A stretch of DNA of 64,000 bases, taken from positions 124,001-188,000 of IMG/VR virus record IMGVR_UViG_3300033146_002768, one strand, 5' to 3'. The notes below the pieces were generated by a model, which had not been told where the DNA came from, did no database searches, and was given only the letters and a program-made list of their open reading frames with translations. Shown in pieces: positions 11,349 to 52,236 of the stretch (positions within the stretch are counted from its first letter, which is position 1; each line of letters starts with the position of its first letter). The position numbers and the translations under genes were made by a program.

Positions 11349-11368
11349 AATATATCTCCTAATAAGTA

Positions 11369-29375: not shown

Positions 29376-30376
29376 TCATAAATTTTTGTTAGTGTAATAG
29401 GATCAGCATTAGTAATATCCTTAGAGCTAACATCTTCATAACTATTACAGACTTTACAATGTTCATGATCAGATAAATTTAAATAAGCATTAGAACTATA
29501 TACTTCATCTAATTTCTGAATATTTAAATTTCCTATCTTTGTTTTAAAATATATATCACCAGAGCATCCACACCCTATCATAATACCTGTTGATGAAATA
29601 AAATTTTTAGTAAGAAAGTATTGACACATCTTAGGTCTTTCTTTAACATTAGCAGTTAATTTAAAATTTTCAGACTCTAATACTTCATTACTAATTAATG
29701 ATCTACGACTACAAAAATCATCTCTTGGAAATAACATAGAATTTGTCATTCGACTAATCTGAAATAATAACTTATAAGTTTCAGATGTTATTAGTAATTT
29801 ATGATGTATTTTTGTTTTTGTATAAATAGGAATGTTTAAGTTTATATTTATATTATTATCAATTAAATATTTTAAATTATTTTTGAAATTTAAATAAAAG
29901 GTTTTTGTACTTCTGGCAAACCTTTCAAATTCAGAAAAATGTAAACCATAACAACTAATGCCTAACCAACTTATTTTTTTTAATGACAAGAGTTTATCTA
30001 AATATTTATTATTATCAATTGTTAAATTTGTATAAAAATGATATCCATCAACATTGGGATGATTTTCTAATATATCTAATTTCTCAATAAATGTTTTATC
30101 TAAAAAAACTTCGCCATTCATTGGAGTTAATGAAAAATAAGTAAATCCAAAATCACAACATTGATTCAATATATCTTTAAACATATCAATTGACATACTC
30201 ATTGACTTCTCTGTTTTCTTTTCACCTCTTTCTTTTTGATTACAATGGATACAATTTAAATTACATATATTGATAGATTCGATTGCAATATAGTTATAAA
30301 ACATATTTCCATTTTTAGTAAATGATTTATATCTAATATTCTTTTCTATATTAGGAAATTTTGAGAATGTAATCAT
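29354..30376 (-). CDS. radical SAM protein (twitch/SPASM-like)
   Basis: CNLNCIHC, NGEVF, C-terminal C...CGC...IGNL...CKVC. Confidence 0.85.
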   Translation of the reverse strand: MITFSKFPNIEKNIRYKSFTKNGNMFYNYIAIESINICNLNCIHCNQKERGEKKTEKSMSMSIDMFKDILNQCCDFGFTYFSLTPMNGEVFLDKTFIEKLDILENHPNVDGYHFYTNLTIDNNKYLDKLLSLKKISWLGISCYGLHFSEFERFARSTKTFYLNFKNNLKYLIDNNININLNIPIYTKTKIHHKLLITSETYKLLFQISRMTNSMLFPRDDFCSRRSLISNEVLESENFKLTANVKERPKMCQYFLTKNFISSTGIMIGCGCSGDIYFKTKIGNLNIQKLDEVYSSNAYLNLSDHEHCKVCNSYEDVSSKDITNADPITLTKIYEWRQENL

Positions 30377-35957: not shown

Positions 35958-36062
35958 TTATTTATAAATAAATGGATCTTTTTTTTTAGATTTTCTTTTT
36001 TTAATTATATATTTAATTTCTAAAATAAAGTCTATCCATAATTCTATTATTTTTTTAATCAT
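35958..36062 (-). CDS. 34-aa carbamoyltransferase-associated peptide (not in ORF track)
   Basis: MIKKIIELWIDFILEIKYIIKKRKSKKKDPFIYK; start overlaps the upstream gene end. Confidence 0.6.
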   Translation of the reverse strand: MIKKIIELWIDFILEIKYIIKKRKSKKKDPFIYK

Positions 36063-37512
36063 GATTAAATACCTTTATATTGTGGTCTATTCCAAATTGG
36101 ATTGCATCCGATGAATTATTTACTAATGGTTGTCCTTTAACATTTAAACTAGTATTTAATAACATTGGGCATCCAGTCTTTTTATAAAATTCATTTATTA
36201 AATTCCAATAACCAGGACTTTCTTTTTTATTAACTGTATGAACTCTTGATGTATTATCAACATGAACTATAGCAGGAAATTTATCAGGATACTTACATGT
36301 CATTACATATTGCATGTAAGGACTTTTAGAAATAATCATATTAAAATATTCAGCGGCATATTCCTCTAATATAGATGGTGAAAAAGGTCGAAACTTTTGA
36401 CGATGTTTAATGTCGTTAATTTTATCTTTTATATTATTCCCACGAGGATCAGCTAATAAAGATCTATTACCAAATGCTCTTGGTCCAAATTCTGCTCGAC
36501 CATTTGCAACTCCAACAATATTACCTTTTAACAATTCTTCTAATAAAGATTTAACTGGATAATCACCTTTAATATTATGACCAAGATAAGGTCCTTTCCA
36601 ATTTAATCTTCCATTAATTAATGAAGCGGCTCCTATAGAAGACCCCGAATCACCTGGATTAGGCATTATCCAAATGTCATTAAAATATTTAGGTATTAAT
36701 CTATTAGCTAAACAATTTAAAGCAACTCCGCCACAATAAACTAAATTTTTTGAATTAGATATATGTTTAGATTGTTTAATAATATTTTCAATTACTTCTT
36801 CTGTAACTTGTTGAATTGAAGCTGCTATATCTTTTAGATAAGCTCCTTGTAGATAATCATTTGGAATTCCTTTATGACAATTTATTTTAAGTTTAAAAAA
36901 TTTATCTTTAATAAAATCCTTTTTAATTTTATCAGCATAAGATGGATACCCCCAACCAGCCATTCCCATTAAAATATATTCATCTTCATTTGGTTTTAAA
37001 CCACATCGTTGAGAAAATGCTGAATATAATATTCCTAATGAATGAGGATAATTAACTTTTTTCAATAATTTTAAATCATCTTTATTTCCTTCCCATATAC
37101 TTAAAGTAGACCATTCACCAATAGAATCTATACAAACAATAACAGCATTATCAAATGGAGAAGTAAAATAACTTGCAGCAGCATGACATTTATGATGATC
37201 CAAATATTTAATTGGAGTTTTAGGAAAATCAAATTGTTTAAAATAATTATGAAATATATTTTTAGTTTGAAATACTTCATTATATTGACCAGCAAATAAC
37301 TGTCTTGTTTTCTTTAAATATGGTTTTTCATAAAAAGCTATAACATCAGGAGTACCAAATCTTAAAGATTCATTTAATATTTCTTGGTTTAAATATAGAT
37401 CATTTTTTATACCAGAATATCGTTCTGAATGAGCAGCAAATAATATTTCATTGTCGTCTATTAATGCAATTGATGCATCATGACTTAGTGCATTTATTCC
37501 TAATACTTTCAT
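36055..37512 (-). CDS. O-carbamoyltransferase (NodU/CmcH family)
   Basis: SHDAS, HHKCHAA, GGVALNC, EFGPRAFGNRS, LNTSLN. Confidence 0.92.
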   Translation of the reverse strand: MKVLGINALSHDASIALIDDNEILFAAHSERYSGIKNDLYLNQEILNESLRFGTPDVIAFYEKPYLKKTRQLFAGQYNEVFQTKNIFHNYFKQFDFPKTPIKYLDHHKCHAAASYFTSPFDNAVIVCIDSIGEWSTLSIWEGNKDDLKLLKKVNYPHSLGILYSAFSQRCGLKPNEDEYILMGMAGWGYPSYADKIKKDFIKDKFFKLKINCHKGIPNDYLQGAYLKDIAASIQQVTEEVIENIIKQSKHISNSKNLVYCGGVALNCLANRLIPKYFNDIWIMPNPGDSGSSIGAASLINGRLNWKGPYLGHNIKGDYPVKSLLEELLKGNIVGVANGRAEFGPRAFGNRSLLADPRGNNIKDKINDIKHRQKFRPFSPSILEEYAAEYFNMIISKSPYMQYVMTCKYPDKFPAIVHVDNTSRVHTVNKKESPGYWNLINEFYKKTGCPMLLNTSLNVKGQPLVNNSSDAIQFGIDHNIKVFNHD

Positions 37513-39319: not shown

Positions 39320-39888
39320 AATAACACCTCAATATCTATTCTTTCTCCACCTTGAAATTCAGTAATTCCAAAATTAGTTTCTAATATACCTTTATAAAAT
39401 CTATCAGAAACATTATATGGAAAAGTAAATATACTTGGAGATATTTGTAAATGTTTTTCAAATTCTTTAAACATTTTCTCTGAATCATTATTTATATATT
39501 CGCATTTGTATCTTAAATTATTTATTAATCTAAGGTCTGTATGACTGTGACTATGTCCACTTATAATAGTATTGTCTAAAGAATTAATAAATTTTATCTG
39601 ACTCCAATTCATATAATTTTCATAGTTTCCTGATTTAGCTTTTAACATAGCATCTTGACAAGTTATAAAGTCCCAACTTTGTGGTTCGCCTGTTGAGTTA
39701 ACTACCCCTGTAGGTATATTAAAAATAAGTGTAGTATCTAAATCATATAAATCAGGAAGAAATAAATATTGAGTCATTAATGCATCATCAAAACTAAGAA
39801 TATAATCCTCTAAAGACAAACATAAATATTCTTCTTTAAATTCATGTATCATTAATACTGGTTTATCTATATTCTTTTTTGTATACAT
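39316..39888 (-). CDS. polysaccharide deacetylase (NodB/CE4-like)
   Basis: LSFDDA, GHSHSH, FTFPY. Confidence 0.8.
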   Translation of the reverse strand: MYTKKNIDKPVLMIHEFKEEYLCLSLEDYILSFDDALMTQYLFLPDLYDLDTTLIFNIPTGVVNSTGEPQSWDFITCQDAMLKAKSGNYENYMNWSQIKFINSLDNTIISGHSHSHTDLRLINNLRYKCEYINNDSEKMFKEFEKHLQISPSIFTFPYNVSDRFYKGILETNFGITEFQGGERIDIEVLL

Positions 39889-40435
39889 ACCATAACCCCG
39901 ATTTATTTCCTTGATCTAAAAAAATTTTATTATAATTAATAAATAAACTATTTAATGTTTTAATTATATCTTTTGGATTTTTTAATCCAATCGGTCCACA
40001 TATTATAGACTCTTTAGATTTTAATTTTGGTTTACTTAATATCAATAATTTAGATAATCTTTTAAAATCATAAAATGAATCAACCATAATTAAATCTATA
40101 CTCTTATCACTAAAATTATTTATTGAGTTTAATACATCATCTTTTATTGTTTTTACATATTTATTAATTTTATATTTTTTGATATTTTTTTTCAAAGTAT
40201 TTTTCATATTATATTCATCTATATCTATACAATAAACTTCTAATTTCTTATAAATAATATATGGAGATATACTACAAATTGATCTACCTTTATAATTGCC
40301 ACATTCTACTAATGTTGAATTATCTGGGATCAAATCTAATAGCGCCCAATATCCTAATACTGATGTATAATCAAACCACCCTTCTGGCAATCCTTCATAT
40401 AATATTTTTGGATATATATTGCGAGCTTGAATCAT
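39863..40435 (-). CDS. class I SAM-dependent methyltransferase
   Basis: LVECGNYKGRS, YCIDI, SIDLIMVD. Confidence 0.75.
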   Translation of the reverse strand: MIQARNIYPKILYEGLPEGWFDYTSVLGYWALLDLIPDNSTLVECGNYKGRSICSISPYIIYKKLEVYCIDIDEYNMKNTLKKNIKKYKINKYVKTIKDDVLNSINNFSDKSIDLIMVDSFYDFKRLSKLLILSKPKLKSKESIICGPIGLKNPKDIIKTLNSLFINYNKIFLDQGNKSGLWYVYKKEYR

Positions 40436-41274: not shown

Positions 41275-42174
41275 TCATAATACTTCTCCCTCAATCCAAT
41301 CTGAGAAATATTTATATTTAGTTCTATCTAAAATATGTTCAAAATTATTATCAAATACTTTTAAAAAGAATTTTTTAAAAACCTTACTACTAAAAATTGT
41401 ATTTATATTATCTAATTTATAATCTAATATTAATTTATTGTGATGTCTTGTAACTTCACATATATCATCAATACCATCTTTATGATTTCTGCCAAAAACT
41501 TCAGGACAAATAATTTGACAATCGGACTGGATAGCTTCTATTAAAGTATGAGGAAATGGGTCTTGGAATTGTTTTGATTTAGGATAAATATAATGAGTTA
41601 CTTTTTTAAAAAACTCAATATTATTAAAGGTATGAGTATATTGTTTAATATGCTTATTAGAAATGTTTAAAGAACCGATATTATTTCCCATAGTATAAAT
41701 ATTAACATCTTGTTTTATATCTTTTAAAATATCAGTTATACATTTAAAACTATCTGGCGTTAACCAGTTTCTTATATAGAATCCAACACAAGGAATGTTA
41801 GATGAATTTTTTTTATTTATTTTAAAATCTGTTATGAAAGGAATGTAATGTTTTATTTTTCTTGCTGACGTATAGTAAAAACCATTATTACATGTATCAT
41901 ATAAAATAGAATGATCTCTAGAATACATTAAATAATTTAAGTTTCTTAAACTAATTATATTCAATGGAAATGAATAATTAGAAGCATCTTGTGTATTAAA
42001 TATAATTCTTTGATATTGCTCATTCAATTCTCTTAAATGAGCAATATCTCGAATTTGTTTACAATGAATAGTATCTATATAATCACTATGTTCTTCAGCT
42101 AATCTTTGAGATGCAGTAAATGCTCCTCTTTTTAAATTGTCGTACTTCACGGATATAACTAAATATTTTTTCAT
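41275..42174 (-). CDS. GT4-like glycosyltransferase
   Basis: YIYPKS..QDPFPHTLIEAIQSDCQII; N-terminal RGAFTASQRLAE. Confidence 0.6.
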   Translation of the reverse strand: MKKYLVISVKYDNLKRGAFTASQRLAEEHSDYIDTIHCKQIRDIAHLRELNEQYQRIIFNTQDASNYSFPLNIISLRNLNYLMYSRDHSILYDTCNNGFYYTSARKIKHYIPFITDFKINKKNSSNIPCVGFYIRNWLTPDSFKCITDILKDIKQDVNIYTMGNNIGSLNISNKHIKQYTHTFNNIEFFKKVTHYIYPKSKQFQDPFPHTLIEAIQSDCQIICPEVFGRNHKDGIDDICEVTRHHNKLILDYKLDNINTIFSSKVFKKFFLKVFDNNFEHILDRTKYKYFSDWIEGEVL

Positions 42175-42198: not shown

Positions 42199-42792
42199 TT
42201 AATTAAATGCTGAATAGAATGTAGCTAACCTTGCTTCAATATCTTCAACAGTTGTTAGTAATATAACTTCATCTGAGAAAATTTTGTAAATATCATAAGT
42301 TGATTTTCTCTCATCTAATTTATCTCTAAGATCTAAATAAATATCTAAAGCATCAATTATTGCTTGATCCCCTGCATTTATTATTTCAAGATATTTAGCT
42401 TCTCTATTTTCATCAGTAATTACATAACCAAGATCAATCAATCTATTATTTATAATAGTAAATCCATAAAAATCAAACATTGAAAGACTACCAACTCTGT
42501 TTGATGTAAATTGTCTAGCTTGATTTCTTGCACCAAGAGCTGCTGCAACAATTGCATCTTCTGCTGCCTGAATTATTAGATCACCTTCGACTAATGGATT
42601 GATTAAATTTTTAGCAAAGAATACTGATTGATTAGCTTCTAAAGAAGTTTCAATTGCGTTATAGCATTCAATTGATGAAATTTCATATAGTCTAACTCCG
42701 CCAAATTCAAAGATAGTTTCTTCATCCCCTTGAAATACAGATACTATTTGGTAATTAACACCAACATCATTAATACCAGCTATAAGTTTCAT
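42199..42792 (-). CDS. acidic hypothetical protein, first gene after an internal motif B
   Basis: GGAGG RBS; composition like the structural genes. Confidence 0.6.
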   Translation of the reverse strand: MKLIAGINDVGVNYQIVSVFQGDEETIFEFGGVRLYEISSIECYNAIETSLEANQSVFFAKNLINPLVEGDLIIQAAEDAIVAAALGARNQARQFTSNRVGSLSMFDFYGFTIINNRLIDLGYVITDENREAKYLEIINAGDQAIIDALDIYLDLRDKLDERKSTYDIYKIFSDEVILLTTVEDIEARLATFYSAFN

Positions 42793-42919: not shown

Positions 42920-44032
42920 TTATTTTCTATCAAAAACTCCATTTATTTTTCCCCAAATAGGAGACAAACCTTCATGATATGATTCTTTTGGATTTGACAT
43001 TCTCCATTTATAAAGAGGACCGCTTACACAATGAGTCTCTGTTGAATTATTTAAATATTTTGTATTAACAACCATACTTCCATATTTAATCGCTTCTTCA
43101 ACAATTGTAGTTCTCCACATAGGTAATATGGCTGTTACTATATTACCTGTATCAGGATTATCTGTTTTATCAAATCTTAAAATTGATAAACACTGTTGAT
43201 GAAATCTAGCATTATCTAAATAATAACTTTTATCTAAATCTCTTGATTTACAAATAAATTTTATTAATTGAGATAACATTGGAAAATATGTTCCATGCAA
43301 CTGATCTGAAATTCCTCTATACCTAATTTCTTGAGGTTTATATTCTCTACATACTTTATCAAGTTTTAACATTGGCTCTGTAGTATCACAACTTAATAAT
43401 ACTCCATAAGAATATTCTTGATTAGGTTTTAAAGTTATAATATTTTCAGTTATATCTCTAATGTATTTAGGATCAGTTTCACTATCTACACTTAACGCCC
43501 AATTAACTTGATTACTATCTGGAAATTTATTTATATAAGTATGATCTAATAATTTAATACCATTAGTATAAATATGTATTTTATTATTTGTATTTTCACA
43601 AATCCAATGAACTAATTTATCAAGATCTTTAAACATAGTTGGTTCTCCACCAACCATTCTAATCACTGGATGATATCCATCATAATGATATTCTTTATAT
43701 GGTCTTGAACCATAACCTCTTAGATCATTAGGAACAAATTCTTTTATATTACTTATAAAATCTTCAAGGGTATTGTTACCAGGATGTTTAACAATCAAAT
43801 CTTTTTCATAACAATATTTACAATTTTTATTACAATCATTTGTCATATGAAAAAATGATGTGAAGTAACCTCCTGCTGTTTCTTCGGGATGAAATTGTTT
43901 TTCCCAAATACTAAAATCTTCTTCTAATAATACTTTATCATCTTCTGATACTAACCATACTCCATTCATATCATAAACAATTTTCTTTTCTATTATATCT
44001 CTAAATTTATTTAAACCATGTATATTAGTCAT
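42920..44032 (-). CDS. radical SAM protein
   Basis: CNKNCKYC, VGGEPT, YTNG. Confidence 0.9.
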   Translation of the reverse strand: MTNIHGLNKFRDIIEKKIVYDMNGVWLVSEDDKVLLEEDFSIWEKQFHPEETAGGYFTSFFHMTNDCNKNCKYCYEKDLIVKHPGNNTLEDFISNIKEFVPNDLRGYGSRPYKEYHYDGYHPVIRMVGGEPTMFKDLDKLVHWICENTNNKIHIYTNGIKLLDHTYINKFPDSNQVNWALSVDSETDPKYIRDITENIITLKPNQEYSYGVLLSCDTTEPMLKLDKVCREYKPQEIRYRGISDQLHGTYFPMLSQLIKFICKSRDLDKSYYLDNARFHQQCLSILRFDKTDNPDTGNIVTAILPMWRTTIVEEAIKYGSMVVNTKYLNNSTETHCVSGPLYKWRMSNPKESYHEGLSPIWGKINGVFDRK

Positions 44033-45062
44033 TACTAATTTCTCCTGTATGAAAATTCTGATTATAATAATATGTTATTGGACATATATCATAAATACTA
44101 TTTTTAATATTATCTATTAAATATCGTTGAATTAAAAACAACTTAGACTGGTATATATCGTCTATGCTGGTGTATAATTCTGGATCTATATTAAGGTCAT
44201 CATTAAATTTATATGGCGCAAAAAACGGACATTGGACTATTGTATTGTTATAAGTATAGATAGCCTTTAATGGAAATCTATGACAACCATTAACATGATA
44301 AGATACATCAACATTATCTAATTTTATAATATCTTGAAATTCAGAGTATGTTTTTTGTATTGTATTAAAATTATTACAAGGGTTTTCTAATTCTTCATAA
44401 TCCTTTAATAATTGCAAGACATAAGTTAAATTTAATGGTTTATACTTTTCCATTATATATAATAATTCATCTCTATTTTTTATTACAGTATTAGCTATAA
44501 CTTTAATTCCTATGTCTTGTAATCGTTTTATATTTTTATAATGCTCTTCAAAGAAACCTTTATCAAAATGATAGTAATCTATTGAAGTATAAAAAGTAAA
44601 TTCCTTACCAACAGCATCACATATATCTTTACATAAAATAAAAAACATTAAATTATTTCCAATGTTTTTTAAGTTAGAATTAATTCTAAAACTTAATTTC
44701 ATTTTATGTCTTGTATAAATATTTAAACAACGATCTAAAAATTTTAATAAATCATTTGCTGGCAATAAGGTTAACTCACCACAATTGAAATGAAGTTTTA
44801 AAGAATCATGACCGTCATTTTTAAATTCAATTAAATACTTTTCTAAAAAAATATAAAATTTTTCATAATCAAATTCTTCATCTTGATTTAAATATTCTTT
44901 GAAGCAACAATGTTCGCAATTCATATTACATTTACTAGTTAAATTCACCCCAAGGTTAGGAGTGAATTTAACTATATTATTTTCTTGTAATATAATTTTA
45001 TTACACCAACTTTGAAAATCATTGCTATTCTCTATATGTCTAAACAATTCTTTTATATGCAT
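44025..45062 (-). CDS. radical SAM protein
   Basis: CNMNCEHC, NCGE, TSID.YH. Confidence 0.85.
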   Translation of the reverse strand: MHIKELFRHIENSNDFQSWCNKIILQENNIVKFTPNLGVNLTSKCNMNCEHCCFKEYLNQDEEFDYEKFYIFLEKYLIEFKNDGHDSLKLHFNCGELTLLPANDLLKFLDRCLNIYTRHKMKLSFRINSNLKNIGNNLMFFILCKDICDAVGKEFTFYTSIDYYHFDKGFFEEHYKNIKRLQDIGIKVIANTVIKNRDELLYIMEKYKPLNLTYVLQLLKDYEELENPCNNFNTIQKTYSEFQDIIKLDNVDVSYHVNGCHRFPLKAIYTYNNTIVQCPFFAPYKFNDDLNIDPELYTSIDDIYQSKLFLIQRYLIDNIKNSIYDICPITYYYNQNFHTGEISND

Positions 45063-45069
45063 ATGTTTC

Positions 45070-45630
45070 CTATAGATATTCTATATCATATTTTAATCTA
45101 ATATCACTTTTAGCTGAATAGTTACAGTTACATGTGCAAGCATAATTACAATTACATGTACAAGCATAATTACATTGACATGTACATGCATAATTACATT
45201 GACATGTACATGCATAATTACAATTACATGTACAAGAATAATTACAATCACAAACACATATTGCTTCTATAACATTAACTCTATCTCTCATTGCATTATA
45301 TTGTTGAGCTTCAATTTCATCATCTGTACCAGTATCAGTATCAGCTAAATATGACGGCCATGTCCATGCAGTAGCAGCATTGATGCCATCACGAAGTCTT
45401 CTAACATGTAAACTACTAGCATTAGTTGCAGTAGTAACAGCACCTGGATCTGCTGGCCAGCTAGCACTTCTTCTTGTTAATTCTGCAGCAATAGCTGTTC
45501 TTAATTCATTATGATAAATAGCTTTAATTGAGTTAGTTGTTAATGGATCGTCGCTCCAAGTAGTAGGAGTTATACCTGGTATATACCCTCCATGTGCTGG
45601 GCAACTATTTGTGTGTCCTCCGCAAGCCAT
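45070..45630 (-). CDS. Cys-repeat protein 2, putative radical SAM substrate
   Basis: six C-x-C-x-C-N-Y-x repeats, then SDIRLKYDIEYL. Confidence 0.85.
   Translation of the reverse strand: MACGGHTNSCPAHGGYIPGITPTTWSDDPLTTNSIKAIYHNELRTAIAAELTRRSASWPADPGAVTTATNASSLHVRRLRDGINAATAWTWPSYLADTDTGTDDEIEAQQYNAMRDRVNVIEAICVCDCNYSCTCNCNYACTCQCNYACTCQCNYACTCNCNYACTCNCNYSAKSDIRLKYDIEYL
45115..45258 (-). repeat. 24-bp coding repeat x6 (CxCxCNYx)
   Basis: read directly. Confidence 0.9.
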
Positions 45631-45642
45631 AGTATTATCTCC

Positions 45643-46218
45643 TTATTTAGTGCCTGAATAGTTACAATCACATGTACATGAATAATTACAATTACATGTG
45701 CAATAGTTACAATTACAAGTACAATAGTTACAATTACAAGTACAAGCATAATTACAATCACAAGTACAATTATAATTACATTGACATGTACAAGCATAAT
45801 TACAATCACAAACACATTCAGTTTCCATTGTATTGACTTGCGATCTAATAGCATTATATTGATCTACTTGAATTAGATCTCCAACTTCTGTATCTGGATC
45901 GTCTAAATAAGATGGCCATGTCCATGCTTTAGCAGCATTTACTCCATTTCTTAATTGTCTTACATGATTACTTTCAATTATATTTGTAGTAGCTACTGTT
46001 CCTGGGTCAGTTGGCCAACTTTGACTACGTCTAATTAATTCATCATCAATAGCATTTCTAAGTTCGTTATGATGTGTTGTTATAAACTTAGTAGATGTGG
46101 TTAACGGTTGTGTAGTCCACACAGTAGGAGATTCTGGGTATATTCCCTGAACATTAGATAGACAAGTGTTACTATGGTCTTCGCATGAAGATGGTGTTGT
46201 ATGTCCTGTACATGCCAT
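45643..46218 (-). CDS. Cys-repeat protein 1, putative radical SAM substrate
   Basis: seven CxCxCNY(x) repeats; N-terminal ~130 aa paralogous to the 45070 protein (HNELR.AI..EL.RR, AWTWPSYL). Confidence 0.85.
   Translation of the reverse strand: MACTGHTTPSSCEDHSNTCLSNVQGIYPESPTVWTTQPLTTSTKFITTHHNELRNAIDDELIRRSQSWPTDPGTVATTNIIESNHVRQLRNGVNAAKAWTWPSYLDDPDTEVGDLIQVDQYNAIRSQVNTMETECVCDCNYACTCQCNYNCTCDCNYACTCNCNYCTCNCNYCTCNCNYSCTCDCNYSGTK
45655..45816 (-). repeat. 21/24-bp coding repeat x7
   Basis: read directly. Confidence 0.9.
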
Positions 46219-46221
46219 AAT

Positions 46222-47370
46222 TTATCCTCCGTTTTGTTGCAATAATTTTCTTATCGCAAAAACTATTTTTCCATTTATTTTATAAAAATTGCATAATCTT
46301 GGTTGTGTAGTATAATCTCTCCATTTCTCAAAATAGTCTTTCTTTTCACTTCGGTCAAATTTAACCGGATTACATCTTAAACAAAATGTCGCTAAGCAAT
46401 TTTTACATTCCTCAGGTTCCCAACCAAAATTATTATTATGTAACTTATTAGTTATATCTAAATTTGTTATAAAGGATTCATTTTTAATATCAATAATTAA
46501 ATGTTCACCTTTTTTATCATCGTACATACTTCCATGACATTTGAAAATATTACCATCCCAATTAACACAAACCATATCTCGACCTGCGCAACATAAAGCT
46601 TTATTAGGATTAAACCAACTAAAGAAGAATTTATTATTTGTTTTGAAAAATTCTATTTCTTCCTTAGCAATTTTAATTAAAGACTCATTCAGTTCTTTAT
46701 TGAATACTTCTATTTCTTTATTATTATATTTTTCTAAGTTATAATAATCTATTGTTGGAAAATAATTATCACTTCTAAAGAAATTATTTTCAGGCATTTC
46801 TTTATAAAGATTTAATACATCTTCTCTTGCTTCAGGAAGATATTTAAATGCTTCAGGTGATATAGTAGATTTTATAACTGATGGTATTTTTCTTTTCCAT
46901 AAGTCTTTAATAACATTTCTTATTTTAGTACCAGTTAATTTATTCTTTTTAGTTTTTCTAAAGATATCATGAACTGGCATACCATCATATGATACTTGAA
47001 CACAAAACTTTGGATGACCAAACAAAGATTTATTTTTAGATTCTTCAAATATATCCATATAACGATCTAATAAATATCCATTGCTATAAATAAAAAACTT
47101 TACTCTATCATCTGTTTTAAAAGCAGTGTATATTTTTCTAATTGCTTTTTCATTAAGAGTAGGTTCCCCACCCCAAAATCCAATATTAAGTAAATCATAA
47201 TTCTTTTTAAAGAAATCAGAATTTAAAAGTTGATTCATTTTTATAATAAACAATTCATGATCTTTAAATTCTTTATGTTCAAAAAATTCATGTTCAAAAC
47301 AATAGGTACAATTGAAATTACAATTTGCTGTAACCGTTAAGTCGATATTATATATTCTTATATTTTGCAT
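46222..47370 (-). CDS. radical SAM/SPASM peptide-maturase-like protein
   Basis: CNFNCTYC, FWGGEPTLN, VSYDG, CCAG...DGNIFKC...CKNC...CLRC...C. Confidence 0.9.
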   Translation of the reverse strand: MQNIRIYNIDLTVTANCNFNCTYCFEHEFFEHKEFKDHELFIIKMNQLLNSDFFKKNYDLLNIGFWGGEPTLNEKAIRKIYTAFKTDDRVKFFIYSNGYLLDRYMDIFEESKNKSLFGHPKFCVQVSYDGMPVHDIFRKTKKNKLTGTKIRNVIKDLWKRKIPSVIKSTISPEAFKYLPEAREDVLNLYKEMPENNFFRSDNYFPTIDYYNLEKYNNKEIEVFNKELNESLIKIAKEEIEFFKTNNKFFFSWFNPNKALCCAGRDMVCVNWDGNIFKCHGSMYDDKKGEHLIIDIKNESFITNLDITNKLHNNNFGWEPEECKNCLATFCLRCNPVKFDRSEKKDYFEKWRDYTTQPRLCNFYKINGKIVFAIRKLLQQNGG

Positions 47371-47380
47371 TATTCACCTT

Positions 47381-48376
47381 TTAGAATTGTCTAAATTCAT
47401 GCTTTGTTTCTTTTTCATCATATGTAATTCCTGTTGTAGGAGATAAATATGAATTACCTATAAAATTATCTTTTTCACATATTCTGCATATATCACATAC
47501 ATGTCCACAAATAGGAATTTTATATCTTTCAAAAATAGATTTTAAATATGGAAGATTTTTTTCTTTAATTGTTTTGCCTACATGTGATTGTTTTAAAGTA
47601 TCATCAAGTTCTTGATAAGCATATCCAATAGTAATCCTACTTAAATAATCACTATTAAATTTTTCTAATATATAAATAGTATCGTCAATTACTTTATCAT
47701 AATTACCAGAATGAACTGTATAACTAATTTTAAAAGGAATTTTATATTTAGATAATGTTTTAATAGATTCTTCAACTATATCTTTACTATTAGTTCCATC
47801 TGGAAATTTTCTTTTGAATTGTCCAGAACCATCATAACTTATTTCCAAATTAAAACTTATATTATAGTGTTTACCATATTCTATTAAACTTTTTAAAGCA
47901 TTTAATTTGATAGAATTAAATAAGGTAGCATTAGTTATTAAACTTAATCCAAATCCTTTTGCTTTACCTTGAGAAACTAATTCTATTGTTTTAGCTATTG
48001 TATATTGTATTAAATCAAATTTTAAAAAGGGTTCTCCGCCCATAATAACAATAGTTGATATACAGTCTTTTTCTCTTACGCAAATTTCATTTAAAAAATC
48101 ATCAATCATTTTAGGAGTACAATTAGCTTGATCTTCAAGACCATTCTTACTACTAGATTCATAGCAATATGTACATCTTAAATTACAATCAGTATTTAAA
48201 TAAATAACATTAGTTCTTTGACTATTATTCATTTTAATTTTATTTGTTGGCAGATTGATACAAGTGTCAAATTCACAAGAGTTACATTCACCATTACATT
48301 TTTGAGATTCATTCTTTGATAATATATCACTCATATCATTAAAGAATGAATCTATATGTTTATCTATTTGATACAT
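47381..48376 (-). CDS. radical SAM protein with extra N- and C-terminal Cys clusters
   Basis: CNLRCTYC, MGGEPF, ISYDG; CNGECNSCEFDTC; CGHVCDICRIC. Confidence 0.9.
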   Translation of the reverse strand: MYQIDKHIDSFFNDMSDILSKNESQKCNGECNSCEFDTCINLPTNKIKMNNSQRTNVIYLNTDCNLRCTYCYESSSKNGLEDQANCTPKMIDDFLNEICVREKDCISTIVIMGGEPFLKFDLIQYTIAKTIELVSQGKAKGFGLSLITNATLFNSIKLNALKSLIEYGKHYNISFNLEISYDGSGQFKRKFPDGTNSKDIVEESIKTLSKYKIPFKISYTVHSGNYDKVIDDTIYILEKFNSDYLSRITIGYAYQELDDTLKQSHVGKTIKEKNLPYLKSIFERYKIPICGHVCDICRICEKDNFIGNSYLSPTTGITYDEKETKHEFRQF

Positions 48377-48804
48377 TAGTTTCCAATACTTTGTCTAATT
48401 TTATCTACTAAAGATGTAATTTCATCATCAATGTTTTCTTGTACTATTGGCGGTGTAGTTCCATCTGGAATATTTGAATGTCCATGACAATTAAATGCCG
48501 GGTCTTCATTGTTTTCTATATTAGTAACTGGACGTTTAAATAATTCTGAGGCTTCTTGAACAGGGTGATTAGAAACTGGGTGTTTAAATAGTTCTGAGGA
48601 TTCTTGAATAGGTTGACTAAAAATTTCTGGTTCATTACATTTACAATTGTCATCTTCTAATAATTTCAATACTTTATCACTTAATTGCAAAGCTTCAAAA
48701 CTAACTTCATCATTAATTTCTTTCATTGCATGTGTGATTTTTAAAAGACCTTTAGCACAATTAAAAATAATTTCATTTTGTTCTGGTGTATTATTACAAC
48801 TCAT
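48376..48804 (-). CDS. accessory protein of the maturase operon
   Basis: between two rSAM genes; internal QE(S/A)SELFK(H/R)PV repeat. Confidence 0.6.
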   Translation of the reverse strand: MSCNNTPEQNEIIFNCAKGLLKITHAMKEINDEVSFEALQLSDKVLKLLEDDNCKCNEPEIFSQPIQESSELFKHPVSNHPVQEASELFKRPVTNIENNEDPAFNCHGHSNIPDGTTPPIVQENIDDEITSLVDKIRQSIGN

Positions 48805-48819
48805 TTTCGTTTCTCCTTC

Positions 48820-49935
48820 TTAACCTACATTTTTTATTGAATTAATTAATGTTTCTTTAAACATTTTATTTTCTTTTAGTTCTTTGGTAATTCTCATTGT
48901 ATTTTTATAAGTAATTTTTAATATCTTACATAAATTATCAATCGGTTCTGCATACTCTTCTGGTGATGATGAATTTTTTAATTGACTATTCATACACCCA
49001 CCATTACAGTATTTATATAATTCACATTCTAAACATTTTTTAAATGTCTTAGGATTTATTAGATTTGGATTTCTAAGTAATTGAATTTCTTTAGTAAATT
49101 CTTGATTAAATGAATTTCCTATTTTCTTTTCTTTACAGCTACCAAATCTTGCACATGGATATATATCTCCATTAGGCATAAACCCAGCTCCACCAGTTCC
49201 AGCAAAACAACCAAAAGGTCTTTTACCAAAACTCTTACCAAATAAAAGGTCTAAAGTATATAGTTGAAAGAATCCAACATTAGCATTAATGCCTTCGTTA
49301 TAATATTTGATTACTTGGTTAGCTAATAAATGACATTCAATTTCATAATTAGCAACATCATAATCTGTCCATATATCATCTCGAACTAATGTAAAATCAG
49401 GGTTGTTGACATTTAATTCTTCAACAAACCATTTAAAATTATCAACCATTGTAGGAACACAATCAGGTGATACCATTACTTTACACCCACCACCACGTCC
49501 AAAGAAATATGATTTTAATGGTTCAGTTAAATATAAATCTAAACTAGAACCACCATGTTTCAATTTACGATTTTTTTCATTCCACAATCCATCAAATGAT
49601 AAAGACAATGCAATCTGATTATCATCAATGTATTGTCTTTTATAATCATCTTGTAATACTAAACCATTTGTCATTGCTATAATAAATTTACAATGAGAAT
49701 CATTTTTTAAAATTGGAATTATATATTCAATAAGCTCCCAATTTAATAATGGTTCACCACCAAACAATGCAGCAGTATATTCATGTTGTCCATAAAAGTC
49801 CATTATCTTTGGGAGCATCTTAAAATGTTTATCAAATATTTCGTTTGTCATATTATTCGGTTGTTGATTAATATAACAATATTCACAAGCTAAATTACAA
49901 TCTTCAGTCGTTACTATCTGAAATTCAAATCCCAT
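48820..49935 (-). CDS. radical SAM/SPASM peptide-maturase-like protein
   Basis: CNLACEYC, FGGEPLLN, LSFDG, CFAG...GDIYPC...CLEC...CNGGC...C. Confidence 0.92.
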   Translation of the reverse strand: MGFEFQIVTTEDCNLACEYCYINQQPNNMTNEIFDKHFKMLPKIMDFYGQHEYTAALFGGEPLLNWELIEYIIPILKNDSHCKFIIAMTNGLVLQDDYKRQYIDDNQIALSLSFDGLWNEKNRKLKHGGSSLDLYLTEPLKSYFFGRGGGCKVMVSPDCVPTMVDNFKWFVEELNVNNPDFTLVRDDIWTDYDVANYEIECHLLANQVIKYYNEGINANVGFFQLYTLDLLFGKSFGKRPFGCFAGTGGAGFMPNGDIYPCARFGSCKEKKIGNSFNQEFTKEIQLLRNPNLINPKTFKKCLECELYKYCNGGCMNSQLKNSSSPEEYAEPIDNLCKILKITYKNTMRITKELKENKMFKETLINSIKNVG

Positions 49936-49945
49936 TATATTTCCT

Positions 49946-50470
49946 TTATTTCACGAATCCTAATACTAATTTTTCATCTGGATTATCATTAGTTTCTAAT
50001 GCAATAGCCACTTTAAATATATGTTCTAATACATTAGTTGCTGATCTTAAACAACCATTACCTGCAGAAATAAGAATATCTTTTTTATAAACTGGTCCGA
50101 TTGTTCTAACTGGAACTCTACCAACTAAACCAACAACTGCTCCATCTTCCATTTTTGTATTCATTTCGAAACCAGGTGCTTTAGAAATAATACCAACTAC
50201 AAATTCAGATGCATCTTTATCACAAATCTCTGCATCAAATTCACTATCAGATATTTCCATTACTGTCCCAATAGGAAGAGAAATATCTGGATTAACAGAA
50301 TATCTCTCAGCAAGGTCACCGTAATATGCTCCAGTTGTATCACCTTGAAATGTAGCACAAAAAATATTATTAAATCTATCAGTTAGACCGCTACCTATAT
50401 TGTATGCTCCATTGCCAACATCAGTAGTAGTTTCATCTTTACCAATTTTTTGTCTTATTTTATAATTCAT
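49946..50470 (-). CDS. fibre-associated intramolecular-chaperone-like (peptidase G2-like) domain protein
   Basis: YGDLAERY, GTVMEI, VVGIISKAPG, GLVGRVPVR. Confidence 0.65.
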   Translation of the reverse strand: MNYKIRQKIGKDETTTDVGNGAYNIGSGLTDRFNNIFCATFQGDTTGAYYGDLAERYSVNPDISLPIGTVMEISDSEFDAEICDKDASEFVVGIISKAPGFEMNTKMEDGAVVGLVGRVPVRTIGPVYKKDILISAGNGCLRSATNVLEHIFKVAIALETNDNPDEKLVLGFVK

Positions 50471-50481
50471 AATATATCTCC

Positions 50482-51306
50482 TTATACCTCAATCCAAACG
50501 TTACCAGCAGAATAAGGTGCTAAAGAAACAACGTCAAATTGATTAGCTAAAGTAACAGTTGTATTTCCTTCAATAGTATCACTACCTTGTCTTTGAACAG
50601 TTACAGTGTTGGCATCAGAAGAAAGTTTCATTATTCTAATAACTCTATCTGATGTAGATGCTAAAGGTAATTCAACTATAGTGTTTCCAGCAGCAGTACT
50701 TACAACTACAGTATCATCTTCTGATGTAGCGGTATATGTTCCACCGCCAGTAACCTCAGAATAAACTACAGATGTTCCTGCTCCACCACCACCAGCTGTT
50801 GATGTTCCAATGCTTGGATTTTCTGGATCATAATTAAATACTGCATCAACTTGTTCAACTCCACCTGGAGCACTTACTTCTATAGCACCAAGGAAAAGGT
50901 GTGTACCTGGATTATAAACAGATGCTCTTTGTGAAGGTTTAATAATCTTAACAGATGCTTCTGGTGGAGGAGATATCTTTGCATATTCATAATGAAGGAC
51001 TAGATAATAATATCCAACCTCATTCCAAACACCACCTGCTCCATCTACATAAAAATCGACATCTGTCATATCAACATTAATGTTTTCAATTTCAATTAAT
51101 ACATCATCCATTATTGCTTTGCCAGCATTTGCTCTTGAAGTAGTATTGTTAACTATTTCTACAGTTATAGGAGATGGCATTAATAATACATTTGCACCAT
51201 CTGATATAATTCTAGTAAGTTTATTTACTACATCTGAGTTGTAGCTTGAATAAGGATCAACACTTCTGACTTGTGTAGGAATTGGGTTCCCCATAATTTC
51301 CTCCAA
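50482..51306 (-). CDS. putative baseplate/tail fibre structural protein
   Basis: C-terminal VELP...TVTV...DTIEG...W module typical of fibre/baseplate proteins. Confidence 0.55.
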   Translation of the reverse strand: MEEIMGNPIPTQVRSVDPYSSYNSDVVNKLTRIISDGANVLLMPSPITVEIVNNTTSRANAGKAIMDDVLIEIENINVDMTDVDFYVDGAGGVWNEVGYYYLVLHYEYAKISPPPEASVKIIKPSQRASVYNPGTHLFLGAIEVSAPGGVEQVDAVFNYDPENPSIGTSTAGGGGAGTSVVYSEVTGGGTYTATSEDDTVVVSTAAGNTIVELPLASTSDRVIRIMKLSSDANTVTVQRQGSDTIEGNTTVTLANQFDVVSLAPYSAGNVWIEV

Positions 51307-51380
51307 TTTATTTTACTTTCTAAGTGAACTTTAATCTTATGAGTTTCTAAAGTGGCAAAAACCACTAAAATCGACAAATA

Positions 51381-51394
51381 TTTATAATATGTTC
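51381..51394 (-). promoter_or_regulatory. motif B
   Basis: exact copy at the head of the fibre/rSAM operon. Confidence 0.7.
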
Positions 51395-51490
51395 TATTTC
51401 AATTTACATGCTAGATTTATATTTTAATAGTATGATTCTATATATATTAATAAACATAATATAACACAAAGCAATTGTACCGACGGAATA

Positions 51491-51533
51491 TTTGGGATAA
51501 TGCAAGGTGTTTGACATCTTACATTATCCCAAA
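51491..51533. other. 20-bp imperfect inverted repeat (stem-loop)
   Basis: TTTGGGATAATGCAAGGTGT-TTG-ACATCTTACATTATCCCAAA. Confidence 0.75.
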
Positions 51534-51582
51534 AGTAACATCATCCGTATTTAGTAAATTGTGCAAAATAACTGATTAGTAA

Positions 51583-51596
51583 TTTATAATATGTTC
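51583..51596 (-). promoter_or_regulatory. motif B
   Basis: exact copy. Confidence 0.65.
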
Positions 51597-51612
51597 TATA
51601 TGTTTGGTTAAC

Positions 51613-52236
51613 TTAGTCACTTATTATATCAGTGTCCTCAAATACATCTTGAACAGTAGGATAGTGTTTATCTACTGTTACAATTATCCAGCCATCATCT
51701 TTTAATTTTTGATTTTTATGTGGATCAGGAAATGGATCTTCATTATGCCAAAAAGAATTAGGAAAGTCAAATGCTACTTTCTTAATAGGGTCAGCCATAT
51801 CAGTAATATATTTCCATAATAATGCATCATCATGAAAATGTCTTTTCTCTATACTATAATTATTTTCTAAGTAAGGATAAGCATCATGAAGGAATGTTAG
51901 AATATCAGCTTTATTTTTTGATACTCCTTCTAAGTTTATATGTGAAAACTTATCATTCAATAAAGGATTATCAATATCTATTTCTTCATCTAATGGTTCA
52001 GATGGTATTCCTTCTGTATCTTGAAATAGAATACTATCTTTGAATTTATATCTTGTCGCTTGATATTGTGTGCTAGATATAGGACAATCTGGATACTTTA
52101 ATTTATACTCAGCGAAGGTCATTCCATCATGTTTCTTTTTTAAATGTTTAGGTGTTATAAGTCTGAATGCTTCGCCACACTCTTGGCATATAACTTTACC
52201 ATTTATACCTTTAGGATATTGCAACTCAATAGTCAT
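51613..52236 (-). CDS. zinc-finger protein with a possible endonuclease-like C-terminus
   Basis: VICQECG...HLKKKH.MTFAEYK; C-terminal D...FWH...GW.I pattern. Confidence 0.5.
   Translation of the reverse strand: MTIELQYPKGINGKVICQECGEAFRLITPKHLKKKHDGMTFAEYKLKYPDCPISSTQYQATRYKFKDSILFQDTEGIPSEPLDEEIDIDNPLLNDKFSHINLEGVSKNKADILTFLHDAYPYLENNYSIEKRHFHDDALLWKYITDMADPIKKVAFDFPNSFWHNEDPFPDPHKNQKLKDDGWIIVTVDKHYPTVQDVFEDTDIISD

What the first reader, a model, noticed from the sequence alone, without database searches (positions are those of the whole stretch)
45070..51306. The Cys-repeat substrates look like virion fibre parts, not secreted peptides
Seen: protein 45070 ends ...CNYSAK-SDIRLKYDIEYL, matching the SD.RLK..I autocleavage motif that opens peptidase S74 tail-fibre chaperone domains, but it stops right there. 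The N-terminal domain has W..DPL...IKA.(Y/H)HNELR.AI repeats like those of phage fibre proteins. The operon starts with a fibre/baseplate-like gene (50482) and a stand-alone DLAERY chaperone-like gene (49946), behind motif B. No signal peptide or exporter gene is apparent. Inference: these are trimeric fibre tips whose repeats are enzymatically stapled, i.e. RiPP chemistry on a virion protein, possibly with the chaperone supplied in trans.
Basis: partly seen in the sequence, partly recalled or inferred. Interest (0 to 1): 0.85.

Follow-up and report, generated by a model that had tools for sequence, protein, structure and literature searches.

The report
Radical-SAM-linked Cys-repeat phage fibre, split chaperone
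Two small cysteine-repeat proteins of a 207-kb phage look like virion fibre proteins: one ends in the first 12 residues of a fibre-folding, self-cutting chaperone domain whose remainder is a separate gene in related phages, and they sit among radical-SAM enzymes that probably cross-link the repeats.

Summary
Protein A (45630-45070, minus strand) ends in CNYSAK-SDIRLKYDIEYL, and no signal peptide or exporter gene was found.

The tail is conserved. Of the 120 listed homologues, 91 end in exactly 12 residues, S-D-x-R-L-K-x-x-I-x-Y-hydrophobic. Three continue past the SD motif, two into a Pfam-confirmed Peptidase_S74 domain starting at that Ser.

In 7 independent relatives a gene after the repeat protein (directly after it in 6) encodes an 87-96 aa protein matching S74 positions 15-54. 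S74 is therefore naturally split, and this fragment occurs only where the tail is present (7/12 vs 0/12 loci).

The 174-aa DLAERY protein belongs to the Peptidase_G2 chaperone family and has the phi29 gp12 fold.

Order across most of about 26 independent viral loci: G2 – rSAM1 – small protein – rSAM2 – rSAM3 – Cys-repeat – (S74 rest) – two conserved unknowns.

Campylobacter phage IBB_35 gene 3-9 carries the same repeat, lies near an rSAM3 orthologue, and was detected in purified virions.

Not shown:
- any cross-link;
- trimer formation;
- cleavage of the tail;
- a fibre-like nature for gene 50482.

The window holds no S74 remainder.

This is a new variant of known kinds and has not been described in the literature I could search.

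The parts
50485..51294 (-). First gene of the operon (270 aa from the ATG at 51294). A conserved unknown, found only in the closest relatives (L007, L014).
   Evidence: No hit in Pfam, PHROG, NCBIfam, PDB or isolated phages. A fibre or baseplate nature is not shown.
51371..51598 (-). Two exact copies of TAGAACATATTATAAAT (51380-51396 and 51582-51598) upstream of the operon. Read on into the following base, each contains a T4-late-promoter-like TATAAATA.
   Evidence: 17 matches at up to 3 mismatches against 5.2 expected. A promoter role is inferred, not shown.
49946..50470 (-). Stand-alone Peptidase_G2-type intramolecular-chaperone (beta-tulip) domain protein, 174 aa, with the GDLAERY motif.
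   Evidence: 10 of 14 family members hit PF11962. The AlphaFold2 core has pLDDT above 90, and the top Foldseek hits are phi29 gp12 entries 3suc and 3gqh. The same domain forms the C-terminus of an 854-aa tail-fibre protein in L003 and of CP220 gp036.
48820..49935 (-). rSAM1: radical SAM/SPASM enzyme, PapB-like.
   Evidence: NF047865 E 1.1e-40; TIGR04085 SPASM 45.6 bits; PF04055. Orthologues are present in most related loci, and it is 37% identical to CP220 gp023.
48376..48804 (-). Small acidic protein (142 aa) with a conserved N-terminal helical region, found between rSAM1 and rSAM2 in many loci.
   Evidence: Function unknown; it may be a substrate-presenting partner (inference).
47381..48376 (-). 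rSAM2: radical SAM enzyme.
   Evidence: PF04055 E 2e-15; conserved synteny.
46222..47370 (-). rSAM3: radical SAM/SPASM-like enzyme, directly upstream of the repeat gene in most loci.
   Evidence: It is 34% identical over its full length to CP220 gp136, which lies 2.2 kb from the repeat protein gp140.
45643..46218 (-). Cys-repeat protein B (191 aa): Cys/His N-terminus, three-helix domain, seven repeat units (45655-45816), no SD tail.
   Evidence: (P0017).
45070..45630 (-). Cys-repeat protein A (186 aa): Cys/His motif (45583-45630), three-helix domain (45259-45582), six octads (45115-45258), then the tail.
45073..45108 (-). 12-residue tail SDIRLKYDIEYL. This is the catalytic loop of a Peptidase_S74 domain (Ser and Lys five residues apart), cut off from the rest of the domain.
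   Evidence: In T5 pb1, Ser1264 and Lys1269 are the corresponding residues and 1265-1276 form the loop (PMC4690869).
44025..45062 (-). Lineage-specific radical SAM-like enzyme (CNMNCEHC motif). It and the next gene fill the gap between the repeat gene and the F197 gene, where relatives carry the S74 remainder.
   Evidence: No close homologue in the other loci.
42920..44032 (-). Second lineage-specific radical SAM enzyme.
   Evidence: PF04055 E 5.6e-10.
42202..42792 (-). F197: conserved 197-aa protein that follows the repeat gene or the S74 remainder in most loci.
   Evidence: (phrog_25260). Its IBB_35 homologue, gene 2-36, was not detected in virions.
41275..42174 (-). F299: conserved 299-aa protein that follows F197 in several loci.
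   Evidence: No family hit.

Best explanation
Proteins A and B are small structural, fibre-like proteins of a T4-like or jumbo phage. They are not secreted peptides.

Each has four parts: a short Cys/His N-terminus, a compact three-helix domain made of three related units, a rod-forming run of C-[T/V]-C-[N/D/Q]-C-N-Y-(A/S) heptads or octads, and, in A, a 12-residue C-terminal tail.

Shown:
- The tail is homologous to the first 12-14 positions of the Peptidase_S74 intramolecular chaperone. This stretch is the loop that carries the scissile Ser and its Lys partner.
- Relatives encode the rest of the domain (hairpin plus coiled coil) as a separate 87-96 aa protein. In 6 of 7 loci that gene lies directly downstream; in L016 it is 5 kb downstream.
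- A few relatives still have the fused form.

Inferred mechanism:
1. The free S74 fragment docks on three tails and rebuilds a trimeric chaperone.
2. That sets the register of the repeat rod, probably a triple beta-helix. This is what S74 domains fold, and the 7-8 residue period fits.
3. The Ser-Lys pair then cuts the tail off, leaving a mature end close to ...CNY.
4. Before or during folding, the three conserved radical SAM/SPASM enzymes, whose best match is to thioether-forming peptide and protein maturases, cross-link repeat cysteines to the invariant Asn/Asp/Gln or Tyr side chains. The result would be a covalently stapled rod.

The stand-alone G2-type domain is either a second trans-acting folding aid or a trimeric base.

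In this window the S74 remainder is absent. It is either encoded elsewhere, or replaced, or the tail now serves as a docking peptide.
For: - Tail conservation.
- Fused forms: Pfam S74 model positions 1-54 start at the Ser in P0103, and positions 1-49 in P0113.
- Split forms: fragments from L003, L004 and L005 match model positions 15/16/18 to 53/54 above the Pfam cut-off, and match the extreme C-termini of more than 20 PHROG tail-fibre families.
- Coupling of fragment and tail: 7/12 loci with the tail against 0/12 without, Fisher p = 0.0046.
- Specificity: among about 150 generic viral S74 loci, only the Cys-repeat ones are split.
- The split falls at the loop/hairpin boundary seen in T5 pb1 (PMC4690869).
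- G2 membership and phi29 gp12 fold.
- The same G2 domain ends an 854-aa tail-fibre protein in L003 and the virion protein IBB_35 2-11.
- Conserved gene order across most of about 26 independent loci.
- rSAM1 is PapB-like with a SPASM domain.
- Virion detection of the repeat-bearing IBB_35 gene 3-9, with an rSAM3 orthologue 2.2 kb away in CP220.
- No signal peptide or exporter.
- Late-promoter-like motif upstream of the operon.
Against: - No chemical modification, trimer or cleavage has been observed.
- The repeat region is modelled at low confidence as a monomer, pLDDT about 45.
- The virion evidence is a single study with 2.6% coverage, on a distant relative with a different N-terminal domain, and the alignment rests partly on a low-complexity repeat.
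- The window lacks the S74 remainder, and motif scans did not find one on its contig.
- Some repeat genes (L005, L028, L032-L035) have no radical SAM gene within 8-10 kb.
- These phages carry about 12 radical SAM genes mixed with sugar-pathway genes, so some linkage could be incidental.
- The rSAM scores are far below the curated equivalog cut-offs.
- The N-terminal domain has no significant structural match to known fibres.
Confidence: 0.55

Rival explanations
1. The cysteine repeats are a metal-binding or disulfide-based structural element of a fibre, comparable to the His-x-His iron sites in the T4 long-fibre tip. The neighbouring radical SAM enzymes act on something else, such as sugars, nucleotides or DNA. 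The S74 part of the story stays the same.
For: - The radical SAM genes are very numerous, 12 in the window, and are interleaved with carbamoyltransferases, a methyltransferase and, in relatives, KDO, UDP-sugar and glycosyltransferase genes.
- Some repeat genes have no radical SAM neighbour.
- C-x-C-x-C places three thiols on one face of a beta strand, and the N-terminus has a C-x2-H-x3-C-x2-H pattern.
Against: - rSAM3 sits directly upstream of the repeat gene in most loci, and rSAM1-3 travel with it across very divergent phages.
- rSAM1 and rSAM3 best match SPASM enzymes that act on peptides and proteins (PapB, SCIFF, QhpD, anSME), not small-molecule enzymes.
- The invariant Asn/Asp/Gln and Asn-Tyr positions are the acceptor types used by thioether-forming enzymes (the acceptor chemistry is from general knowledge).
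Confidence: 0.2
2. A phage-encoded RiPP-like product. The 125-residue N-terminal domain is an oversized leader (as in Nif11 or NHLP leaders), the repeats are the core peptide, and the product acts inside or outside the host, for example in metal capture, antagonism or takeover. It would not be part of the virion.
For: - Several SPASM maturases lie next to a repeat-rich substrate, with paralogous substrates in tandem. L007 has three, one of which lacks the helical domain.
- No family or structure hit ties the N-terminal domain to fibres.
Against: - No leader peptidase, transporter or signal peptide was found.
- The C-terminus is an S74 element, a domain otherwise matched here only at the ends of tail-fibre or spike families.
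- Fused full S74 forms exist.
- The module sits next to G2-type fibre domains and, in L003, next to an 854-aa tail fibre.
- A repeat-bearing relative was detected in virions.
Confidence: 0.12
3. The repeat proteins are non-virion assembly scaffolds or decoys. The SD tail is a relic of a decayed S74 domain with no present function in this phage.
For: The window lacks the S74 remainder. Protein B and about a fifth of homologues have no tail at all.
Against: A relic would not keep an exact 12-residue length with invariant Ser, Asp and Lys across 89 clusters. It would also not stay identical between the window protein and its 75%-identical relative in L005, which does have the partner gene.
Confidence: 0.08

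Closest known systems
C-terminal intramolecular chaperone of phage K1F endosialidase and T5 pb1 (MEROPS/Pfam Peptidase_S74, PF13884)
   Same: The tail matches the start of the domain, with the scissile Ser and a Lys five residues on. Fused homologues carry the whole domain. The domain is known to fold trimeric beta-helical fibres and then cut itself off.
   Different: Here the domain is split between two genes at the loop/hairpin junction, and in this window the second part is missing. I found no description of a natural split.
phi29 gp12 pre-neck appendage autochaperone (Peptidase_G2, PF11962; PDB 3suc, 3gqh)
   Same: The 174-aa protein belongs to this sequence family through its close relatives and has the same fold.
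   Different: It is a stand-alone protein, not the C-terminal end of a long fibre. The same fold also occurs in trimeric capsid cement and decoration proteins, so its role is open.
Ranthipeptide and related thioether maturases (PapB/freyrasin Cys-X3-Asp repeats, SCIFF, NxxC systems)
   Same: The best family match for rSAM1-3 is here. The substrate also has short tandem Cys-plus-Asn/Asp motifs.
   Different: Scores are far below the equivalog cut-offs. The substrate is a 186-aa protein with a folded domain and an S74 tail. No leader protease or exporter is present, and the chemistry is untested.
QhpD/QhpC (quinohemoprotein amine dehydrogenase gamma subunit) and anaerobic sulfatase maturase
   Same: Both are precedents, from general knowledge, for SPASM enzymes modifying a subunit of a protein complex rather than a secreted peptide. 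TIGR03906 and TIGR03942 are among the hits.
   Different: They are unrelated substrates that are neither viral nor repetitive.
Campylobacter phage CP220 gp140 / CPt10_1891 / IBB_35 gene 3-9 (Firehammervirus)
   Same: It has seven CNYCTC[D/N] heptads preceded by a homologous helix. An rSAM3 orthologue is 2.2 kb away and an rSAM1 orthologue is in the genome. The protein was detected in virions.
   Different: It is 534 aa, with a different N-terminal domain, a long Cys-rich C-terminal region and no SD tail. Published work noted only a 21-bp intragenic repeat and the many radical SAM genes (PMC2853527).
T4 fibre assembly aids acting in trans (gp57A, gp38) and the His-x-His iron sites of the gp37 tip
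   Same: These offer a trans-acting folding helper for a trimeric fibre, and a periodic metal- or thiol-type motif along the fibre axis (general knowledge, analogy only).
   Different: There is no sequence relationship, and neither was tested here.

Membership tests
Peptidase_S74 (PF13884) intramolecular chaperone | N-terminal S-D-x-x-x-K loop carrying the scissile Ser and the Lys partner | tested here: met
   The tail is SDIRLKYDIEYL. S1, D2 and K6 are invariant in 89 tails. In the fused homologue P0103, Pfam model position 1 aligns to this Ser. T5 pb1 Ser1264/Lys1269 have the same spacing.
Peptidase_S74 (PF13884) intramolecular chaperone | Remainder of the domain (hairpin plus coiled coil, model positions about 15-58) on the same polypeptide | tested here: not met
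   Protein A stops after residue 12 of the domain. No remainder is found in the window. Relatives encode it as a separate 87-96 aa protein.
Peptidase_S74 (PF13884) intramolecular chaperone | Autocleavage before the Ser once the trimer has folded | not testable with these tools
   This needs expression and mass spectrometry.
Peptidase_G2 (PF11962) intramolecular chaperone domain (gene 49946) | Match to the family profile | tested here: inconclusive
   The window protein itself gives no hit at E up to 0.1. However, 10 of 14 aligned relatives do (best 1.8e-10), including one that is 57% identical to it.
Peptidase_G2 (PF11962) intramolecular chaperone domain (gene 49946) | Fold of the phi29 gp12 C-terminal fragment | tested here: met
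   Foldseek hits 3suc (E 9.4e-5) and 3gqh (E 3.1e-4), both at probability 1.0. Residues 50-174 have pLDDT of 86 or more.
Peptidase_G2 (PF11962) intramolecular chaperone domain (gene 49946) | Located at the C-terminus of a long fibre or spike and released by cleavage | tested here: not met
   It is a stand-alone 174-aa ORF. The fused arrangement exists in the L003 854-aa protein and in CP220 gp036.
Radical SAM/SPASM peptide-protein maturases (PapB-like) | CxxxCxxC radical SAM core | tested here: met
   PF04055 hits. The motif is present in all 12 candidates.
Radical SAM/SPASM peptide-protein maturases (PapB-like) | C-terminal SPASM auxiliary-cluster domain | tested here: met
   For rSAM1, TIGR04085 scores 45.6 bits against a cut-off of 27, and PF13186 scores 21.3 against 21.5. 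rSAM3 aligns to PapB over model positions 4-308 and has 9 Cys in its last 130 residues.
Radical SAM/SPASM peptide-protein maturases (PapB-like) | Score above the curated equivalog cut-off, meaning the same enzyme as PapB | tested here: not met
   139.9 bits against a cut-off of 340. It is related to PapB but is not an orthologue.
Radical SAM/SPASM peptide-protein maturases (PapB-like) | Thioether or other cross-link installed on the neighbouring substrate | not testable with these tools
   The only evidence is conserved gene order.
RiPP biosynthetic cluster | Leader peptidase and/or exporter, with a short precursor that is released | tested here: not met
   No such families were found from 27.7 to 51.3 kb. 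The substrate is 186-191 aa with a confidently folded domain. The papain-like peptidase at 26266-27279 lies about 18 kb away.
Phage tail fibre or virion structural protein | Presence in purified virions | tested here: inconclusive
   This was not testable for the window phage. The distant repeat-bearing relative IBB_35 gene 3-9 is in the published virion list at 2.6% coverage.

The most novel reading that the evidence does not exclude
This would be the first case of radical-SAM (RiPP-type) cross-linking applied to a virion structural protein, giving a covalently stapled cysteine-repeat fibre rod. The rod would be folded by the first known naturally split S74 autoprotease-chaperone, in which a 12-residue catalytic loop on the fibre is completed in trans by a free 90-residue subunit. 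The system is widespread in large uncultured phages and present in cultured Campylobacter phages.
Probability: 0.4. Interest if true: 0.9.

Novelty: new variant of a known kind. Interest (0 to 1): 0.8.

Why it matters
- **For radical SAM chemistry.** If the repeats are cross-linked, the reach of peptide-modifying radical SAM enzymes extends from secreted natural products to virus particles.
- **For an old puzzle.** It would offer an explanation for at least some of the 11-12 radical SAM genes in CP220-type Campylobacter phages, noted in 2010 and never explained.
- **For protein engineering.** The split S74 is a natural two-piece version of a widely used fibre-folding and self-cleaving module. 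It could serve as a trans-acting trimerisation and cleavage tag.
- **For testing.** The system exists in cultured phages, and its parts are small enough for heterologous expression, so every step can be tested directly.

Tried and rejected
- **Isolated-phage searches.** Megablast of 42-52 kb and tblastn of protein B and of the first operon gene against isolated phages found nothing. The low-complexity filter hides the repeats.
- **PDB sequence searches.** Single sequences and profiles for A, the 174-aa, the 270-aa and the F197 proteins gave only chance hits.
- **Foldseek on the protein A model.** Nothing better than E = 0.1 in PDB or BFVD.
- **HMMER with the N-terminal domain alone against 1.84 billion representatives.** Only 41 clusters came back, almost all of the same family. 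The unit is therefore not a common fibre motif, although one three-unit protein sits next to a Collar/Gp10_C gene.
- **Hunt for the S74 remainder of this phage.**
  - tblastn and a custom HMM on the window found nothing.
  - A word-indexed protein search found only the query itself.
  - A metagenome scan returned only one split-type fragment plus ordinary fused S74 proteins, none from this phage.
  - Three IMG/VR scans did not hit the window's contig.
  - A search for an L005-like ribonucleotide-reductase locus found no repeat gene there.
  - All of these are limited by the motifs used, so absence is not proven.
- **First operon gene against the L003 382-aa gene.** No similarity.
- **CP220 genes beside the rSAM1 orthologue.** They are not Cys-repeat proteins.
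- **Literature searches.** The repeat string, phage radical SAM with fibres, and split S74 gave no prior description.
- **Programmed read-through or frameshift joining the tail to the fragment.** I considered this and rejected it. The fragment has its own ATG 7-22 nt after the stop in L003, L004 and L005, and in L016 it lies 5 kb away.

Full report
**What is in the window**

The window is AT-rich, about 21-34% G+C. It corresponds to bases 124,004-188,003 of a 207,111-bp IMG/VR viral contig, IMGVR_UViG_3300033146_002768.

A long minus-strand gene run starts after a 300-nt intergenic region. That region holds two exact copies of TAGAACATATTATAAAT; read on into the following base, each contains a T4-late-like TATAAATA.

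The genes, in order:
- a 270-aa unknown (true start at the ATG at 51294);
- a 174-aa protein (49946-50470);
- radical SAM enzyme rSAM1 (48820-49935);
- a 142-aa acidic protein;
- rSAM2 (47381-48376);
- rSAM3 (46222-47370);
- Cys-repeat protein B (45643-46218);
- Cys-repeat protein A (45070-45630);
- two further radical SAM enzymes (44025-45062 and 42920-44032);
- conserved unknowns of 197 and 299 aa.

Seven more radical SAM genes, two carbamoyltransferases, a methyltransferase and a papain-like peptidase follow, down to 26 kb. In total there are 12 genes with a CxxxCxxC motif.

**Checking the observation**

- Protein A ends CNYSAK-SDIRLKYDIEYL.
- A has six octads and B has seven units of C-x-C-x-C-N-Y-(x).
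- The N-terminal half has three related units, which AlphaFold2 models with pLDDT 95-98 as three helices. The repeat rod is not modelled as a monomer.
- Neither protein has a hydrophobic N-terminus.
- No exporter or leader peptidase was found.

**The protein family**

A word-indexed search found 329 homologues of 150-300 aa, all from metagenomes.

Nearly all share one architecture: a Cys/His start (MACxGHxNxCPxHxGY, sometimes expanded into many C-x-x-H units), the three-helix domain, 3-16 repeat units, and a short C-terminus.

Across 628 units the consensus is C-[T/V]-C-[N/D/Q]-C-N-Y-(A/S). Position 4 is N, D or Q in about 94% of units, position 6 is N in about 92%, and position 7 is Y in about 95%.

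No Pfam or NCBIfam model covers the family. PHROG 26958, of unknown function, matches only the repeats.

**The tail is a piece of S74, and S74 is split**

The tail is conserved. Of 120 listed homologues, 91 end in an SD tail, and 89 of those are exactly 12 residues long. Ser1, Asp2 and Lys6 are invariant, and Leu5, Ile9 and Tyr11 are nearly so.

Fused forms exist. Three homologues continue past the SD motif. In P0103 and P0113 the Pfam Peptidase_S74 model aligns from its position 1 at that Ser.

Split forms exist.
- In L003, L004 and L005 the gene 7-22 nt downstream encodes an 87-96 aa protein. L005's repeat protein is 75% identical to protein A and has an identical tail.
- That small protein matches S74 model positions 15-18 to 53-54 above the Pfam cut-off.
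- It also matches the extreme C-termini of more than 20 PHROG tail-fibre families.

The fragment tracks the tail. I ran custom HMMs over 37 loci, about 26 of them independent. The fragment is present in 7 of 12 loci whose repeat protein has the tail, and in none of 12 without it (Fisher p = 0.0046). Two further loci are fused.

The split is specific to this family. Among about 150 unrelated viral S74 loci, the only split ones belong to it.

The break point makes structural sense. In T5 pb1 the scissile Ser1264 and Lys1269 lie in a loop (residues 1265-1276) that winds round the trimer, and the first hairpin starts at 1277 (PMC4690869). The natural split therefore falls at the loop/hairpin junction, and both catalytic residues stay on the fibre protein.

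**What the window lacks**

No S74 remainder is present in the 64 kb. In the gap between the repeat gene and F197 where relatives carry it, there are two lineage-specific radical SAM genes.

In L016 the fragment lies 5 kb downstream, after a KDO-sugar cassette and directly before the F197 homologue. L007 has the same cassette and ends just where the fragment would be expected.

Motif scans of IMG/VR did not hit the window's own contig. This is not proof of absence.

**The DLAERY gene**

Ten of 14 relatives of the 174-aa protein match Peptidase_G2 (PF11962). The window copy itself falls below threshold.

Its AlphaFold2 core (pLDDT above 90) matches phi29 gp12 and its C-terminal autochaperone fragment best (E about 1e-4, probability 1.0). 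It also matches trimeric capsid cement and decoration proteins of the same fold.

The same domain forms the C-terminus of:
- an 854-aa tail-fibre protein two genes upstream in L003;
- CP220 gp036, which sits next to the gp25-like baseplate wedge gene;
- a PA5oct virion protein.

**Linkage to radical SAM enzymes**

The gene order is kept in most loci: G2 – rSAM1 – small protein – rSAM2 – rSAM3 – Cys-repeat – (S74 rest) – F197 – F299. rSAM3 sits directly before the repeat gene.

rSAM1 is most similar to the ranthipeptide maturase PapB (E 1e-40) and has a SPASM domain. Other hits are SCIFF, QhpD, anSME and CXXX-repeat maturases. All are far below the equivalog cut-offs.

A minority of repeat genes (L005, L028, L032-L035) have no radical SAM neighbour within 8-10 kb.

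**Evidence from cultured phages**

Campylobacter phages of the genus Firehammervirus (CP220, CPt10, CP21, IBB_35) carry orthologues of rSAM1 (37% identity) and rSAM3 (34% identity, E 6e-75).

They also carry a 534-aa protein, CP220 gp140, with seven CNYCTC[D/N] heptads preceded by a helix alignable to helix 3 of protein A. The rSAM3 orthologue lies 2.2 kb from it.

Timms et al. 2010 recorded the 11-12 radical SAM genes and the 21-bp intragenic repeat without linking them (PMC2853527).

In the IBB_35 virion proteome (PMC3322345, Table S2):
- Gene 3-9 (60,318 Da) is listed. I identified it as the gp140 homologue by position and by a computed mass of 60,317 Da. Coverage is only 2.6%.
- Gene 2-11, which carries the G2-like domain, is listed at 14% coverage.
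- The F197 homologue, gene 2-36, is not listed.

**The N-terminal domain**

Foldseek finds nothing significant.

An exhaustive HMMER search with residues 1-124 finds only 41 clusters. A few of them are proteins made of tandem FTDDPL..G..IKAVH..ELR units with no known family. One of these sits beside a Collar/Gp10_C tail protein.

**Interpretation**

The best-supported reading has three parts.
1. The repeat proteins are small fibre-like structural proteins.
2. Their rod is folded from the C-terminus by a two-piece S74 chaperone.
3. Their repeats are probably cross-linked by the dedicated SPASM enzymes.

Shown:
- homology of the tail to S74;
- the existence of fused and split forms;
- coupling between the tail and the fragment;
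- G2 family membership and fold;
- conserved gene order;
- the absence of export signals.

Inferred:
- trimer formation;
- a triple beta-helix;
- tail cleavage;
- any cross-link and its chemistry;
- the position in the virion.

The main rival keeps the fibre reading but makes the cysteines metal or disulfide sites and the enzymes unrelated. A secreted or intracellular RiPP, and a decayed relic, are less likely.

**Novelty**

I found no description of this repeat family, of its link to radical SAM enzymes, or of a split S74 in the searchable literature.

All the building blocks are known kinds. The combination and the split are new.

Noticed in passing
window 27694-49935: There are twelve genes with a CxxxCxxC radical SAM motif within 22 kb, mixed with two carbamoyltransferases (30376-31920 and 36055-37512), a methyltransferase (39863-40435) and a DUF6071 gene. 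This mirrors the unexplained 11-12 radical SAM genes of Campylobacter phages CP220 and CPt10.
   Followed up: partly
window 51380-51396 and 51582-51598 (minus strand); near-copies at 11368 and 13164: TAGAACATATTATAAAT occurs as an exact duplicate about 200 nt apart upstream of the operon. It contains a T4-late-promoter-like TATAAATA. The IBB_35 paper also remarks on duplicated promoters.
   Followed up: partly
L007 10001-12127: The closest syntenic relative has three tandem repeat-protein paralogues (239, 146 and 307 aa), all with the SD tail. The 146-aa one lacks the three-helix domain entirely. This may hint at mixed trimers or modular exchange.
   Followed up: no
L016 572-5526 and L007 12191-17596: A KDO-type sugar cassette lies between the repeat gene and the S74 fragment. 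It holds a KDO8P-synthase-like gene, a SPASM radical SAM gene, a transaldolase and a CMP-KDO-synthetase-like gene. Glycosylation of the fibre or of the host surface is possible.
   Followed up: no
P0111, P0116, P0135 (homologues): Variant architectures exist. In two of them the Cys/His motif sits at the C-terminus, after the repeats. The third has three helical units followed by C-H-S-D type repeats instead of CNY repeats.
   Followed up: no
window 26266-27279: A papain-family (Peptidase_C1) cysteine protease gene lies at the downstream end of the radical SAM cluster, next to an endolysin-like gene (25551-26045).
   Followed up: no
window 51613-52236: This 207-aa protein has an N-terminal Cys-rich zinc-ribbon-like start and no family hit. 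It is conserved at the same position in L007 (206 aa), just upstream of the operon.
   Followed up: no
window 20105-22261: A 718-aa protein with weak PHROG tail-fibre matches (phrog_3904, phrog_819) is the only other fibre-like gene seen on this strand downstream of the cluster.
   Followed up: no
L005 8215-10865: In a contig from the same sample, a repeat protein 75% identical to protein A sits with its S74 fragment right after a ribonucleotide reductase gene, with no radical SAM gene within 10 kb. The repeat gene and fragment therefore move as a unit, independently of the enzymes.
   Followed up: partly
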